The position numbers were made by a program, and so were the translations under genes. Below, piece by piece: positions 40,132 to 53,382 of a stretch of DNA of 64,000 nucleotides; positions within the stretch are counted from its first letter, which is position 1, and each line of letters starts with the position of its first letter. The DNA comes from Hormiphora californensis (taxonomy: Eukaryota > Animalia > Ctenophora): NCBI GenBank assembly GCA_020137815.1, contig CM035350.1, positions 6,572,001 through 6,636,000 of the forward strand. The letters run 5' to 3'. The notes under the pieces are model-generated. The model was not told the DNA's origin. It saw only the letters and a program-made list of their open reading frames with translations, and did no database searches.

Positions 40132-41953
40132 TCCATATAATAAATTCCAAAATGTTAGTCCGATAATTGTTTTCTCCCTGCTCCTCCTACAGTTTTTGAG
40201 CTAGACCCCTGAAAATTTGTACACTGGTACTTTGGACCAAGGCGGGTGTAAGTACGGGCTCAGATTTTTGATCCGATCTTTACAACAGTGACGTCACGGG
40301 GTGACGTCATTGCGACAAAAAGACTTACATTTTTCAAACGCTTCTAAGACCCTGAAAACGGCTCTAAATCAAAAAACTAACGCAATAGTGGGGAAAGAGA
40401 ATCGTTTGAACTTCATTTTACATGATAGCGATTTCCCGTAACTCAATGTTTAAGGGTCGTAAATCGCGTCGGGAAAGTTAAAAATGCCAAAAATACGATA
40501 TTTTTCACCGTAGCCACCCAAAATCTTATCCAATCGATATGAAACTTGGTCGTTATGTGAACTTTAATGTCCTTTGGCCAGGGGTTCCCGGAAAACGGAT
40601 TGGCAAGATGAGAACTGACCGGAGTTCTTATAATTCTAAATTCACGAATTTGGAATTTTTCGTCGACTTTTTTTTGGCGACATAAAACGCGAGGAAATTT
40701 TCAATGAATTTTAAAATTTTACACTGCGCGCGTAATTCTAGGTTCCGCGCGCGGCGTAAAAAAGCAGCGCTTTTTTGGAAAAATTCGCGCGTTACAGTAA
40801 ATGATTTACCCGCCTCGCCAAAATTGTAATGGCCGTTTTTTCAAAAAAGCCGGCTCAATGACGCAAAATCATTTTTCGAAAATTTTGATTTTGCGTCAAT
40901 GCGCCACGTCGCCGGCTCAATGACGCAAAATCAACATTTTCGAAAACATGTTTTTTTTCCCAAAATTTTGATTTTGCGCCAATGCGCCGGCCACGTGGCG
41001 CATTGACGCAAAATAAAAATTTTCGAAAACATGATTTTGCGTCATTGAGCCGGCTTACGTGGCGCATTGACGCAAAATCAAAATTTTCGAAAACATGTTT
41101 TTTTAAAAACATGTTTTTTGAAACACGTTTTTTTATTTTTTTCATGTTTTTATTTTTTTTGATTTTGCGTCAATGCGCCGCCATAAAGGTGTATGATATA
41201 GTAGGAGCGGTTAGATCACCACGTGGTTAAAGTCGCATGCCACCCCTTTTTGCGCATTGTCATAGCTCCTCGAGGTCGCATCCAATCGGTAGGCGGTAAA
41301 TGTTAACCAGATCTGAGAGAAAACGTACGTGCAAAACCACGTTTTTGTCCATAACTCAGTCATTTCTTGACCAATTTGCAAAATCTTGGGCGCGTTGGAA
41401 AGAGGACATTGAGCTCTTTCAAATGAGCCCAATAAAACTAAAATCGGCGCAAAATGCGCGGCGTCATGGCGCAAAATGCGCGTTTTCGCCACCACGCCGC
41501 GCAATTTGCGCCAATTTTCATTTTCTTGAGCTCATTCGAAAGATCTCAATGTCCTCTTTCCGATGAGCTAAAGATCTTGCAGATTGGTCAAGAAATGGCT
41601 GAGTTATGGGCAAAAACGTGCGAAATTCTCACAGATCTGGTTAACATTTACCGCCTACCCATCCAATCATTATCAAGAAATGTCCCTCAAGTTTTCGCTT
41701 CTCCTTGAGGAGATCTACAGGTTTGATGAAGGTCACTTTTGGATTGGATGCAAAATGAAGCCGTGAGAGTAACCTGAGATTAGGGTGGCGCGCGACTTTC
41801 TGCACGTGCTGATCTAACCACTCCTACTATGAGACTCATTGCTCTAAGGAACAAACAAATTATCTTTTAAAAATCAAACACAAATGTCACCGGTTATATG
41901 AGGATAAATTACCATTTACCAGGTCACGGGTTCCCAGCAAACGGGTACTCTAG
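40132..41953 (+). mobile_element. Non-autonomous Helitron, tandem copy 2, carrying about 1.1 kb of extra sequence (about 40812-41905)
   Basis: 40132-40811 is nearly identical to 39405-40082, and the same 3' terminus reappears at about 41907-41953. Confidence 0.85.
41201..41827. mobile_element. TA-flanked TIR element nested in Helitron copy 2
   Basis: TA|GTAGGAGCGGTTAGATCACCACGTG...CACGTGCTGATCTAACCACTCCTAC|TA, plus a long imperfect internal palindrome (about 41280-41670). Confidence 0.75.
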
Positions 41954-42453
41954 TATAAATAAATCTTAAAATCACTCACTCAAATAAACAATAAATATTA
42001 CAAATAAAAAGTCAGTCAGTAAAATCACACATTGCGATGGGAGGTGGAGTCGTGAACTTTTTCCTCGTGCCCCTCAGTGAGACCCTGTCTGGCGCCGCGA
42101 CCCATCTGAGCGCACTGATTGAGAATCAAATGGGGTATGGCGCCGCTCATACAGACTACGTTTGACTAATGTATTAATTGATTAAAATTCAATAATTGAA
42201 TATAAGTCTGTAGTGCAGTGTTTCACTCTGCTTCAATTCGCAATTTATATTTTAGAAATAAAAATGAAACAAAAACATCAACGGTTAATAATAATACTTT
42301 TCAAAATCATTAATTTTATGACATTAATACTAATAGAACTCTTTTTAATTGCATTCTACACGCCGTGTAGTACACGGACAGTGGACAGTGTCCACTGGAC
42401 ACTCATTAAAGCATGATTGTATTTGTGTGTGACTGTGTTTATTTTTCCCGGAA

Positions 42454-43293
42454 TCAGGTTTCCTCGCACACCTTCTGTGCCCAGAGAAACAGGCTCAAAA
42501 TGGATCTGTCCACATTGGCCACATTTGTCTGTTTTAGTCCAGCTAAAAGTCCCCTGACCTCATTCACCACCGTCTCGTTCGGTGGGTTACATCTCCCAAT
42601 TCTACTAACTAACGAATCATCCTTTGTACTCAGCATCAAAACATGGATATCATCCCAAGTTTTCAGCTTCTTTCTCGGCTCTCCCAATATCATGTAAACC
42701 GCCACCATGATCTTGAAGACTGTATCAGGAGGTTCTTTATAACTTTTTAGTGCTGCAATCAGGGGCCTGGATAAATCCTGGATATTCGCTGTTAACTCTT
42801 CAACTTCCTCGGCTTTACGATTACCCTCTTCTTCAACCAACTTTTTACCAGTTTCTTGATCTTCTACAGGCAACATCTCAGTAGCAGTAGGTGAGACGCT
42901 TCCAGAGGCTACCTCACCGTACCGTAACTTCCAAACAATATAGAGGAAGAGGATGAACATCGAGGCAACAAGACAGCTAGCAAGGCCGACTATGATGTAT
43001 TCTACCATTTTCACGGCACCATCAGCCCCCTCAACCTGTAGTGCAAGTCAATGAATAACACCGGGGTTAGCAACTATACATATACAGTGACAGGTTTACT
43101 AAAATAGGACAATGGCAGCTGGAAGGTGTGGGTGACTCACTCTGCAGAGCTCTGTGAGGGAGACAATGGGGAACAAGGATGGTACTAACTACTAGTACTC
43201 AGGTAGGGGACCGCCTTGTTAGAGAGGGGGCTAGATAAGACATACCTGGTCCACCAAAAGGGAGGAACAAAAGATGAACAAAACGACGGACAT
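42454..43293 (-). CDS. Type I single-pass membrane protein (about 209 aa) with a cytoplasmic dynein stalk/microtubule-binding-like domain; exons 43246-43293 and 42454-43035
   Basis: MSVVLFIFCSSLLVDQ|VEGA (signal peptide, in-frame phase-0 GT-AG intron); TM IIVGLASCLVASMFILFLYIVW followed by KLR; then IAALKSYKEPPDTVFKIMVAVYMILGE...TWDDI...SLFLWAQ. Confidence 0.8.
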
Positions 43294-43762
43294 GACAGTG
43301 TACAGCGAGGTAACGACACTGCGAAAGAGAGGGAACTGAGAGAGAGAGAGAGAGAAATGTATTATATCAGTGCTTGCCATCCAGCCATTCCTTGCTTAAT
43401 GGATTGTTGATCTCTTACCGCGGTCTCTCTCCCTCTCTCTCGTTGCTTCTCTCTTCTCTCATCTTCTCTTCTCTTTACCTCACTATATTAGTGCGAAGAT
43501 TCTCCGGACATTTTTTTCTACATCACAATGCAATCCTTTGACTTGTAACCAAGACAACTCATGTATAACAGATCGGTTAACAGGTTAAAATAGCAAGATA
43601 CGAACTGATTCTAAATATAAATCGTGCTTGTCCTGATCAGATCTCATTCATAATAATTTCCAAAACCCGCTCAGGGGAATACTCCTGTGTCACACTGTCT
43701 ATACGTCATATTGAGTTCCCTCACACATTCTCAAACATGATGCTACGTAACAAAACAAACCG

Positions 43763-53382
<9,620 letters not shown>

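What the first reader, a model, noticed from the sequence alone, without database searches (positions are those of the whole stretch)
42454..43293. Membrane-anchored stand-alone dynein microtubule-binding-like domain
Seen: a two-exon gene encoding a signal peptide, an ectodomain of under 10 residues, one TM helix, a short linker and a C-terminal domain of about 110 aa (IQDLSRPLIAALKSYKEPPDTVFKIMVAVYMILGE...TWDDI...SILSLFLWAQ). Known: the dynein heavy-chain stalk tip has the pattern L..L....I.E(L/V)(K/R)S...PP..V..V..AV..LLG.....W...and ends S.A...L..W. Inference: this is a dynein MTBD with no AAA motor, tethered to a membrane with the domain facing the cytosol. It would be a minimal membrane-to-microtubule linker, plausible in ciliary membranes or comb-plate compound cilia. 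I know of no described protein with this architecture.
Basis: partly seen in the sequence, partly recalled or inferred. Interest (0 to 1): 0.85.

Follow-up and report, generated by a model that had tools for sequence, protein, structure and literature searches.

The report
Membrane-anchored motor-less dynein microtubule-binding domain
A small ctenophore gene encodes a single-pass membrane protein whose cytosolic tail is a true relative of the microtubule-gripping tip of the dynein motor but has no motor. It belongs to an uncharacterised family found across marine invertebrates, so it may be a passive membrane-to-microtubule tether.

Summary
The minus strand at 42454-43014 carries a 186-codon open exon. 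It encodes a 23-residue transmembrane helix, a disordered acidic linker and a C-terminal domain of about 125 residues.

The dynein reading also holds:
- Alone, the protein hits Pfam PF12777 only weakly (E 0.0098, below cut-off).
- A profile of 30 relatives hits solved dynein heavy chains only, at their microtubule-binding domains (MTBDs), with a best E of 1.1e-14.
- The AlphaFold model (pLDDT 90) superposes on the mouse dynein-1 MTBD at Z 15.7, 1.8 A over 121 of 127 residues. Unrelated folds score Z 5 or less.

The protein is not a lone oddity. At least 115 clusters at 50% identity carry the domain, 101 of them at the C-terminus and 20 behind a transmembrane segment. Sources include ctenophores, a sponge, molluscs, tunicates and a hemichordate. 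All are uncharacterised, and I found no paper on them.

Not shown:
- Exon 1, the signal peptide and the splice junction. RNA contigs cover exon 2 only.
- Microtubule binding. Two basic H1 contact positions are kept and the H3 one is not.
- Any link to cilia or comb plates.

The return coiled coil (CC2) is absent, so dynein-style allosteric control is impossible. If the domain binds microtubules, it does so passively.

The parts
43246..43293 (-). Candidate exon 1: ATG plus 15 codons (MSVVLFIFCSSLLVDQ), a hydrophobic signal-peptide-like stretch ending at a GTATGT donor
   Evidence: Direct reading and translation by reference. Mean hydropathy of residues 2-14 is 2.63. No ATG lies between 43294 and 43345. 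No RNA support obtained.
43036..43245 (-). Candidate intron of 210 nt (GTATGT ... CTAAC at 43066-43070 ... CAG)
   Evidence: It keeps the frame between exon 1 and exon 2, and the unspliced reading stops after 20 codons. Inferred, not shown by reads.
42454..43035 (-). Exon 2: 193 codons plus a TGA stop at 42454-42456. It carries the transmembrane helix, the linker and the MTBD-like domain.
   Evidence: ORF list. RNA-library contigs cover 42433-42999 with 14 synonymous and 7 non-synonymous differences. Orthologue-like P0001 is 85% identical.
42931..42999 (-). Transmembrane helix (YIIVGLASCLVASMFILFLYIVW), flanked by an acidic N-side (VEGADGAVKMVE) and a basic C-side (KLRY)
   Evidence: Hydropathy and flanking charges. 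AlphaFold helix 2-35 with pLDDT 86-94. An aligned transmembrane segment is present in P0001, P0004, P0005, P0007 and P0008.
42838..42930 (-). Cytosolic linker, acidic and predicted disordered
   Evidence: pLDDT below 50 for residues 36-59. Composition. It is the least conserved part against P0001.
42775..42837 (-). Single helix equivalent to the last turns of dynein stalk CC1, leading into H1
   Evidence: AlphaFold helix 2-21 of the domain model, aligned to mouse dynein 3276 onward. The conserved CC1 proline of dyneins is absent.
42457..42774 (-). Core of the dynein MTBD-like domain (H1-H6). The protein ends 10 residues after the invariant H6 tryptophan, so there is no CC2.
   Evidence: PF12777 E 0.0098. 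Family profile against solved dyneins E 1.1e-14. Fold Z 15.7, rmsd 1.8 A. Alignment with this genome's own dyneins.
42438..42443 (-). AATAAA polyadenylation signal, 10 nt after the stop codon
   Evidence: An oligo-dT metatranscriptome contig ends at 42433. Its function is inferred.
43329..43367 (-). 5' region: TATAA at 43362-43366, then a CT-dinucleotide run ending in CAG. This could be a core promoter or a trans-splice acceptor just upstream of the exon-1 ATG.
   Evidence: Direct reading. Read laying flagged 43329-43367 as a skipped repeat. Its function is inferred only.

Best explanation
The gene encodes a small (about 190-210 residue) single-pass membrane protein with a tiny extracytoplasmic N-terminus. 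Its cytosolic part is a roughly 30-residue disordered acidic linker, one short helix and a C-terminal domain that descends from the same ancestor as the dynein heavy-chain microtubule-binding domain (MTBD).

Shown here: the open, selectively constrained coding exon; the transmembrane helix; homology and fold identity with the dynein MTBD; the absence of any AAA motor and of the returning stalk helix CC2; and membership of a metazoan family in which this domain is almost always C-terminal, often behind a transmembrane segment or a long coiled coil.

Inferred: the domain docks on the microtubule lattice as dynein's does, mainly through H1, whose two basic contact positions are kept, and perhaps through the lysine/arginine-rich H2-H3 loop (PRKKLK). 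Dynein sets its affinity by sliding CC1 against CC2. The protein would then act as a passive tether that holds a membrane (plasma, ciliary or vesicular, not determined) against microtubules. Which membrane and which cell type are unknown.
For: Coding exon and selection.

Transmembrane helix and topology: with aligned transmembrane segments in P0004, P0005, P0007 and P0008.

Homology: PF12777 is the top Pfam hit. The best pairwise hits among solved chains are dynein MTBD regions. The family profile finds only dyneins, best E 1.1e-14, and includes isolated MTBD constructs 6kjn and 3err. Thirteen of 30 members hit PF12777 on their own. The sponge member P0014 passes Pfam's cut-off (26 against 24 bits) and hits dynein chains pairwise at E 1.8e-5.

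Fold: pLDDT 90.3; Z 15.7, rmsd 1.8 A over 121/127 residues against 5ayh; Z 12.4-15.4 for the other four dynein MTBD representatives in the Foldseek-independent search of 48,161 chains; unrelated chains Z 5 or less.

Contact positions: the column of mouse K3299 is R and that of R3306 is K in this protein and its clade. K3299 and R3337 are named as microtubule contacts in PMC6629372. R3306 as a contact, and the mouse numbering, come from my memory of the mouse sequence.

A precedent for a motor-less domain of this fold sitting on a microtubule: chain 9ya2_L, Z 10.3. By its residue numbers it is ICMAP2, described as a globular domain bound to intraconoidal microtubule 1 (PMC12819142).

Recurrent membrane anchoring: 20 of 115 family representatives have a transmembrane segment before the domain and none after it. 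Paralogue L002 and its Pleurobrachia orthologue P0025 have an ectodomain, a transmembrane helix, a coiled coil and then the domain.
Against: No experiment and no structure shows that this domain binds tubulin.

The basic H3 residue that contacts tubulin in dynein (mouse R3337) is replaced by H or hydrophobic residues across the family. The H6 arginine (mouse R3382, numbering and role from memory) is kept in only part of the clade and sits one position off.

The domain's net charge is -3.

The same fold also occurs in a radial-spoke subunit (7jtk_C, 7jrj_I). From my general knowledge of radial-spoke architecture, the head and neck lie away from the lattice, so the fold alone does not prove microtubule binding.

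The protein by itself fails Pfam's gathering threshold (15.4 against 24 bits).

Exon 1 and the junction have no RNA evidence.
Confidence: 0.55

Rival explanations
1. The domain is a true dynein-MTBD homologue but has been re-used as a protein-protein interaction module that does not touch tubulin. The protein would then anchor some other cytosolic partner, for example an axonemal or cortical complex, to the membrane.
For: The same fold occurs in radial-spoke chains 7jtk_C and 7jrj_I. The H3 contact residue is lost and the H6 one is variable. The domain is mildly acidic overall. The large sister clade has its own conserved motif, GKxSLKRR, which is absent from dyneins. That suggests a family-specific surface.
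Against: The two basic H1 positions and the PP, G and W core motifs are kept. The H2-H3 loop is basic. In axonemal dyneins an insertion in that loop, the flap, adds contacts with the microtubule (PMC6629372). The other non-dynein chains with this fold come from microtubule-based structures, and one appears to be lattice-bound ICMAP2.
Confidence: 0.3
2. The domain binds the dynein footprint on tubulin, and its main role is regulatory. As a membrane-localised competitor or roadblock, it would locally exclude or stall dynein (or other lattice binders) near a membrane rather than provide mechanical tethering.
For: It superposes on the microtubule-bound dynein MTBD (6rzb_C, Z 14.0). It lacks CC2, so it cannot be released by a motor cycle. 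This is otherwise speculative.
Against: Nothing specific supports competition. The single-copy, short-linker geometry fits a tether equally well. This rival depends on microtubule binding being true in the first place.
Confidence: 0.08
3. The exon is not an independent gene. It would be a 3' exon of the copine gene that lies upstream on the same strand, or a decaying or unexpressed copy.
For: The copine gene runs on the same strand. Its last Copine-domain exon is at 44309-44419, and a possible Gly/Pro-rich tail exon lies at 43766-43978, only about 470 nt from the candidate ATG. No read shows the 5' end.
Against: The exon begins with its own transmembrane helix and has the same layout as the independent short proteins P0001, P0004, P0005, P0007 and P0008. 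A TATAA, a pyrimidine run with AG, and an in-frame ATG exon with canonical splice signals sit directly upstream. Oligo-dT RNA-library contigs cover the exon, and the differences are mostly synonymous. There are no stops or frameshifts.
Confidence: 0.05

Closest known systems
Dynein heavy-chain microtubule-binding domain (tip of the stalk; Pfam PF12777 'MT'; e.g. mouse DYNC1H1 residues 3276-3401 in PDB 5ayh, 3err, 6rzb)
   Same: Same six-helix fold (Z 15.7, rmsd 1.8 A, 121/127 residues). Detectable sequence homology (family profile E 1.1e-14). Shared signature I.E(L/I)(K/R)S(Y/F)..PP..V...M.A...LLG.....W ... S.....(L/F)..W. The basic residues at the columns of mouse K3299 and R3306 in H1 are kept.
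   Different: No AAA+ modules. No CC2, since the protein stops 10 residues after the H6 tryptophan. The CC1 and CC2 prolines that delimit the dynein MTBD are absent. The H3 arginine is not kept. The H2-H3 loop is 3-4 residues longer and basic. The domain is C-terminal and attached to a transmembrane helix through a disordered linker. It scores below Pfam's gathering threshold.
Uncharacterised metazoan proteins with a C-terminal MTBD-like domain, e.g. Pleurobrachia bachei EP00116_P002106 (P0025), Oscarella pearsei P011354 (P0014), Pinctada imbricata KAK3098481.1 (P0002; KY-like transglutaminase and Ig domains plus three copies of the domain), Clavelina LOC143460016 (P0062), and Ciona F7ARZ0 and a protein labelled 'dynein-1-alpha heavy chain-like'
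   Same: Same domain (phmmer E down to 1e-24). It lies within 40 residues of the C-terminus in 101 of 115 representatives, and a transmembrane segment precedes it in 20 of them. Four further paralogues are in this genome.
   Different: This protein belongs to a separate, well-supported sub-clade (SH-aLRT 96, quick tree) of short proteins, most with a transmembrane helix and a short linker instead of a long coiled coil. The named members above fall in the large sister clade. Apart from this gene, every member of the sub-clade is known only from environmental assemblies, mostly marine by their records.
Toxoplasma gondii ICMAP2 globular domain on intraconoidal microtubule 1 (PDB 9ya2 chain L; PMC12819142)
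   Same: A motor-less protein whose resolved globular domain has the same fold (Z 10.3, 120 residues aligned). The paper describes it as bound to the outside of a microtubule.
   Different: No detectable sequence similarity by the tools used here. ICMAP2 is a 1,678-residue soluble protein. It is reported to bind as a dimer between protofilaments 3 and 4, not in dynein's intradimer groove. I assigned the chain from its residue numbering, not from a chain table. The paper does not mention a resemblance to dynein.
Axonemal non-dynein chains with the same fold: 7jtk_C and 7jrj_I (Chlamydomonas radial spoke), 9fqr_Xl (bovine sperm doublet), 9e5c_2e (Trypanosoma brucei doublet)
   Same: Fold match at Z 7.9-12.7 over most of the domain, except 7jrj_I, which aligns 74 residues.
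   Different: The family profile and the pairwise searches did not list them by sequence. One search shows only the best 60 of 81 hits, so weak hits are not excluded. I could not establish which proteins these chains are. None is membrane-anchored as far as the entries show.

Membership tests
Dynein heavy-chain MTBD/stalk (Pfam PF12777 MT) | Scores above Pfam's gathering threshold for PF12777 | tested here: not met
   15.4 bits against a cut-off of 24, E 0.0098, residues 66-128 on profile positions 85-150. Some relatives do pass or come close (P0014 26 bits; best E 8e-7 among 13 of 30 members).
Dynein heavy-chain MTBD/stalk (Pfam PF12777 MT) | Significant profile-level sequence homology to bona fide dynein MTBDs | tested here: met
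   A profile of alignment A1 against all solved chains gave 81 hits. All 60 shown align at the MTBD of a dynein-length heavy chain or an MTBD construct, although a few carry other deposited names. Best E 1.1e-14, with the alignment running from the end of CC1 through H6.
Dynein heavy-chain MTBD/stalk (Pfam PF12777 MT) | Six-helix MTBD fold (H1-H6) | tested here: met
   AlphaFold pLDDT 90.3, pTM 0.84. Z 15.7, rmsd 1.8 A, 121/127 residues against 5ayh. Next unrelated fold Z 5.0.
Dynein heavy-chain MTBD/stalk (Pfam PF12777 MT) | Antiparallel CC1/CC2 coiled-coil stalk with conserved flanking prolines, which couples microtubule affinity to the motor | tested here: not met
   The protein ends at ...WAQKVCEET, 10 residues after the H6 tryptophan. 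There is no CC2 and no CC1 or CC2 proline, whereas this genome's own dyneins have ALP.. and ..EPKR.
Dynein heavy-chain MTBD/stalk (Pfam PF12777 MT) | Embedded between AAA4 and AAA5 of a heavy chain of about 4,000 residues or more | tested here: not met
   The whole gene is about 840 nt and contains no AAA domain. True dynein loci of this genome show AAA_8, MT and AAA_9 in one frame.
Dynein heavy-chain MTBD/stalk (Pfam PF12777 MT) | Conserved tubulin-contact residues in H1, H3 and H6 | tested here: inconclusive
   H1 is kept: R at the column of mouse K3299 and K at that of R3306. H3 (mouse R3337 column) is not kept (H or hydrophobic). The H6 arginine is shifted by one position and variable. K3299 and R3337 as contacts come from PMC6629372. 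R3306, R3382 and the mouse numbering come from memory.
Dynein heavy-chain MTBD/stalk (Pfam PF12777 MT) | Binds microtubules | not testable with these tools
   This needs co-sedimentation, TIRF or cryo-EM.
Stand-alone C-terminal MTBD-like domain family (undescribed; metazoan) | Significant similarity to family members, with the domain at the extreme C-terminus | tested here: met
   117 representatives at E 0.001 or better, 10 at 1e-10 or better, none of dynein length. The domain lies within 40 residues of the C-terminus in 101 of 115. The window's own protein ends one residue after the domain envelope.
Single-pass membrane protein, N-out / C-in | One hydrophobic helix of about 20 residues or more, with more positive charge on the cytosolic side | tested here: met
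   A 23-residue segment, KD19 maximum 2.49. Flanks: 1 K/R and 3 D/E before it; KLRY directly after it, with 2 K/R and 1 D/E in the next 15 residues. AlphaFold helix 2-35. No dedicated topology predictor was available.
Single-pass membrane protein, N-out / C-in | Cleavable N-terminal signal peptide (type I) | tested here: inconclusive
   The exon-1 peptide is hydrophobic. However, it has no basic n-region, and I saw no clear small-residue cleavage motif on reading it. The junction is unverified. The closest relatives lack a signal peptide. No signal-peptide predictor was available, and the joined product was not built.

The most novel reading that the evidence does not exclude
The dynein microtubule-binding domain is not exclusive to the motor. 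Early in animal evolution, or before it, the domain was freed from the stalk and spread as a C-terminal, ATP-independent microtubule-docking module. Animals attach it to transmembrane helices, long coiled coils, KY-type transglutaminase/Ig arrays, EF-hands and CARD domains. The ctenophore gene here would be its minimal form: a single transmembrane helix plus the domain, acting as a direct membrane-to-microtubule rivet.
Probability: 0.45. Interest if true: 0.8.

Novelty: new variant of a known kind. Interest (0 to 1): 0.65.

Why it matters
The dynein MTBD is normally treated as a part found only at the tip of the dynein stalk, with its affinity set by sliding of the stalk helices. A family of motor-less proteins that carries the same domain at its C-terminus would give a new class of microtubule-associated protein. 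The family occurs in ctenophores, sponges, molluscs, tunicates and hemichordates, and many members are membrane-anchored.

It would also give a natural experiment on what the MTBD does when uncoupled from CC2, and a clue to how the domain arose or escaped.

For ctenophore biology, it names a candidate for attaching membranes to microtubule arrays. The claim can be tested directly with a 127-residue recombinant fragment.

If binding fails, the result is still useful. It would show that the MTBD fold has been re-used for other contacts, as the radial-spoke example hints.

Tried and rejected
I could not fetch the DNA around P0001 or the environmental relatives, so I could not test whether exon 1 is conserved.
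- RNA evidence for the junction: only four short contigs from marine metatranscriptomes lie on the stretch, all inside exon 2. The run with the same species label had nothing.
- The word-indexed protein search with the single protein found only P0001. With alignments it was swamped by 8,000 candidates and returned few rows.
- Foldseek E-values were all above 0.001 despite correct top hits. The VIA alignments gave the clear separation.
- The ESM Atlas scores (0.76 and 0.89) are leads only.
- The bacterial promoter and terminator scan is irrelevant for a eukaryote.

Chain identities:
- I tried to name chains 7jtk_C and 9fqr_Xl by sequence, using P0010 and P0014 against solved chains, and through the literature. 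I did not succeed.
- My guess that 9fqr_Xl is an EF-hand protein remains untested and is not used.

Literature searches for a described stand-alone MTBD family found nothing relevant.

Rejected readings:
- The weak Pfam hits to YhdB, Trypco1, Rbsn, DUF460 and YSIRK are noise. Of these, only YhdB recurs, in 2 of 30 relatives.
- The methionyl-tRNA synthetase C-domain hit is chance.

Exon 1 and exon 2 were handled separately, by reference.
Full report
WHAT IS THERE. The minus strand of the window carries an open frame at 42454-43014 (186 codons from a GTG). It stays open upstream to a CAG acceptor at 43036/43035. Its product starts VEGADGAVKMVE. A 23-residue hydrophobic segment follows (YIIVGLASCLVASMFILFLYIVW; Kyte-Doolittle 19-residue maximum 2.49), then KLRY, an acidic stretch (12 D/E against 6 K/R in 45 residues) and a helical C-terminal domain.

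AlphaFold on the exon-2 product, using 10 relatives, gives a long helix over residues 2-35 (pLDDT 86-94). Residues 36-59 are disordered (pLDDT below 50), and a confident helical domain follows. The flanks of the hydrophobic helix carry a net charge of -2 on the N-side and +2 in the KLRY directly on the C-side. By the positive-inside rule, the C-terminal domain is cytosolic whatever the true N-terminus is.

IS IT A REAL GENE?
- One protein in the 5.8-billion-protein collection is 85% identical over the whole length (P0001, 182 aa, from an ENA assembly).
- Four short contigs from three marine RNA libraries, two of them oligo-dT metatranscriptomes, lie on 42433-42999 at about 96-97% identity. Of their 21 differences, 14 are synonymous and 7 are not. 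That is the signature of a constrained coding frame. These contigs come from a close relative in the sea, not from this animal, so they support expression of the exon only indirectly.
- An AATAAA sits 10 nt after the stop (42438-42443), and one oligo-dT contig ends at 42433.

THE 5' END IS NOT SETTLED. It has a GTATGT donor, a CTAAC at 43066-43070 that lies 30 nt before the CAG acceptor, a 210-nt intron that keeps the frame, and a stop after 20 codons if the intron is retained. Upstream lie a TATAA (43362-43366) and a CT-repeat ending in CAG.

Of the closest relatives, P0004, P0005, P0007 and P0008 have a short hydrophilic stub before the transmembrane helix and no signal peptide. P0001 starts at the methionine just before the helix. 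A further in-frame ATG lies at 43380.

The two exons were treated separately, by reference.

INDEPENDENCE FROM NEIGHBOURS. A copine gene runs on the same strand upstream. The Copine domain starts at 47550-47918 and ends at 44309-44419, and a possible Gly/Pro tail exon lies at 43766-43978. The MTBD gene follows within about 0.5-1 kb. Its own transmembrane start, the upstream signals and the identical layout of independent relatives argue that it is a separate gene. A foldback-type repeat lies downstream at 41198-41830.

IS THE DOMAIN A DYNEIN MTBD? Four lines of evidence agree.
- Alone, the protein's best Pfam hit is PF12777 (the microtubule-binding stalk of the dynein motor). It scores only 15.4 bits, E 0.0098, under the 24-bit cut-off. 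Its best pairwise hits among solved chains are dynein heavy chains at the MTBD, E 0.28-1.1. That is suggestive but not significant.
- An exhaustive phmmer of residues 60-186 against 1.84 billion representatives found 117 proteins at E 0.001 or better, none of dynein length. A profile of 30 short members (alignment A1) searched against all solved chains returned 81 hits. The 60 shown all align at a dynein MTBD, from the end of CC1 through H6. The best E was 1.1e-14, and isolated yeast and mouse MTBD constructs scored 1.7e-9 to 3.4e-7.
- Thirteen of the 30 members hit PF12777 on their own (best E 8e-7), and only one other family matches more than one member (YhdB, 2 of 30). The sponge member P0014 passes Pfam's threshold and hits dynein chains pairwise at E 1.8e-5.
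- The AlphaFold model of the domain (pLDDT 90.3, pTM 0.84) aligns to the mouse dynein-1 stalk tip (5ayh, residues 3276-3401) with Z 15.7, rmsd 1.8 A, 121 of 127 residues. It also aligns to inner-arm, outer-arm and dynein-c MTBDs at Z 12.4-14.0. In a Foldseek-independent scan of 48,161 chains, unrelated chains stop at Z 5.0. Foldseek's own E-values were weak (0.02-0.3), but its top list was the same.

HOW IT DIFFERS FROM DYNEIN. I aligned it with four of this genome's own dynein heavy chains. Two of them were confirmed as AAA_8, MT and AAA_9 in one frame.
- It keeps the signature L.(K/R)..I.E(L/I)(K/R)S(Y/F)..PP..V...M.A...LLG.....W ... S.....(L/F)..W.
- It has no proline in the CC1-equivalent helix.
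- It stops 10 residues after the H6 tryptophan, so CC2 is entirely missing.
- Its H2-H3 loop is 3-4 residues longer and basic (PRKKLK). Axonemal dyneins carry their 'flap' at the same site (PMC6629372).

On the tubulin-contact positions:
- The H1 residue at the column of mouse K3299 is arginine here and throughout its clade, and the column of R3306 is lysine.
- The H3 position (R3337) is histidine or hydrophobic.
- The H6 arginine (R3382) is shifted by one position and is variable.
- K3299 and R3337 are named as contacts in PMC6629372. R3306 and R3382, and the mapping to mouse numbers, rest on my recall of the mouse sequence. The mapping agrees with the near-gapless structural alignment ranges.

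Dynein tunes affinity by sliding CC1 against CC2 (PMC6629372). A domain without CC2 cannot be regulated that way.

THE FAMILY. Of 115 representatives with the domain, 101 have it within 40 residues of the C-terminus. Twenty have a hydrophobic transmembrane-like segment before it, and none has one after it. The N-terminal parts vary: long charged coiled coils, KY-type transglutaminase plus Ig-like_KY arrays, EF-hands and a CARD. The Pinctada protein P0002 has three copies of the domain.

Named sources are Pleurobrachia bachei, Oscarella pearsei, Pinctada imbricata, four gastropods, Clavelina, Ciona and Ptychodera. The ESM Atlas clusters are mostly molluscan, and some are auto-named 'Microtubule-binding stalk of dynein motor domain-containing protein'. 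I saw no vertebrate or arthropod member, but the searches were not designed to exclude them.

This genome is 110.7 Mb in 45 contigs. Besides the window's gene it holds four further non-dynein copies:
- L002, at C1:3.49 Mb, has a Cys-rich ectodomain, a transmembrane helix, about 330 residues of coiled coil and then the domain. It is 94% identical to the Pleurobrachia protein P0025. That also places the genome among pleurobrachiid ctenophores.
- L003 lies 286 kb from the window's gene.
- L004, on contig 11, has a transmembrane-like ORF upstream of the domain.
- L005 is divergent.

In a quick maximum-likelihood tree of 105 domains, the window's protein groups with P0001, P0003-P0008 and P0054 (SH-aLRT 96). 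This clade is apart from the large coiled-coil/KY clade and from the four dyneins. The tree has few columns and is midpoint-rooted, so it says nothing about the donor dynein class. The sources of P0006 and P0054 were not looked up.

That fits L004.

OTHER MOTOR-LESS PROTEINS WITH THIS FOLD. The fold searches also returned non-dynein chains from microtubule-based machines:
- 9ya2_L (Toxoplasma intraconoidal microtubule 1, residues 1207-1452, Z 10.3);
- 9fqr_Xl (bovine sperm doublet, Z 10.9);
- 7jtk_C and 7jrj_I (Chlamydomonas radial spoke, Z 12.7 and 8.8);
- 9e5c_2e (Trypanosoma brucei doublet, Z 7.9).

By residue numbering, 9ya2_L can only be ICMAP2 (1,678 aa). The paper describes its resolved globular domain as bound to the outer surface of the microtubule, between protofilaments 3 and 4, and does not mention dynein (PMC12819142). 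So there is a precedent for a motor-less domain of this fold sitting on a microtubule. The radial-spoke case is a counter-example in which the fold probably does not touch the lattice. I could not name the other chains.

MOST LIKELY MECHANISM. The shown facts are a membrane anchor, cytosolic orientation (by charge), a flexible linker, a dynein-type MTBD without CC2 or a motor, and retained basic residues in H1. I infer a passive, ATP-independent tether between a membrane and microtubules (confidence 0.55). The main rival is that the domain now binds a different partner (0.3). A dynein-competitor role is a sub-case of microtubule binding (0.08). A mis-modelled or dead gene is unlikely (0.05). 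Nothing here speaks to cilia or comb plates.

NOVELTY. Seven full-text searches found no description of stand-alone or membrane-anchored dynein-MTBD proteins. The only public trace I met is automatic naming. I class this as a new variant of a known kind: a known domain in an undescribed, conserved, motor-less architecture. It appears right in the sense that nobody has characterised them.

LIMITS.
- No reads from this animal were available.
- No signal-peptide or topology predictor was available.
- The structure is predicted, not solved.
- The family's taxonomic range is known only from the minority of members that carry names.

Noticed in passing
L002 / L008 (G000:C1:3484691-3488236); ORF L002:52-1890: A paralogue encodes a much larger membrane protein: a Cys-rich ectodomain, a transmembrane helix, about 330 residues of highly charged coiled coil with repeated 'AIxxxDxxxLxxAI' modules, and a C-terminal MTBD-like domain. 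It is 94% identical to Pleurobrachia bachei EP00116_P002106, which places this genome among the pleurobrachiid ctenophores.
   Followed up: partly
L003 (G000:C1:6898802-6902140), L004 (G000:C11:5877933-5881235), L005 (G000:C1:1081659-1084976): Three more non-dynein MTBD-like exons. L003 lies only about 286 kb from the window's gene, behind E/K/R-rich coiled-coil exons. L004 has an upstream ORF with a transmembrane-like helix and a Ser/Thr/Pro-rich ORF. L005 is very divergent. L004 probably corresponds to the scan's note s1-872998.
   Followed up: partly
window 43766-47918, minus strand: A copine gene lies directly upstream on the same strand. The Copine (vWA-like) domain starts at 47550-47918 and ends at 44309-44419. 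A second ORF with a similar '...E(L/V)PGQV...' start and a Gly/Pro-rich tail lies at 43766-43978. It may be an alternative or additional last exon. The gap to the MTBD gene's candidate ATG is only about 470 nt, so co-transcription with trans-splicing is conceivable.
   Followed up: partly
window 40847-41830: Dense inverted-repeat DNA lies downstream of the gene. A foldback-like element at 41198-41830 has 48-nt terminal inverted repeats and 138-nt inner arms (41338-41475 / 41483-41620, 86% complementary). A cluster of 33-74-nt palindromic repeats lies at 40847-41180. The mirror-image ORFs at 41211-41708 are a by-product of the inverted arms.
   Followed up: no
window 43231-43380, minus strand: An ATG at 43380 is in frame with the exon-1 ATG at 43293 and would add MASTDIIHFSLSLSQFPLFRSVVTSLYTV. 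If transcription started further upstream, the hydrophobic exon-1 stretch would be internal, not an N-terminal signal peptide.
   Followed up: no
PDB chains 9ya2_L, 9fqr_Xl, 7jtk_C, 7jrj_I, 9e5c_2e (fold-search hits): Several non-dynein proteins in solved microtubule-based machines have a dynein-MTBD-like fold (Z 7.9-12.7). One is probably Toxoplasma ICMAP2, whose publication does not mention the resemblance. Together with the family here, this suggests the fold is more widespread outside dynein than is generally stated.
   Followed up: partly
P0002 (Pinctada imbricata KAK3098481.1), P0027, P0043: In molluscs and other animals, KY-like transglutaminase and Ig-like_KY proteins end in one to three MTBD-like domains. 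P0043 also carries a CARD domain. These combinations are unusual and unexplained.
   Followed up: no
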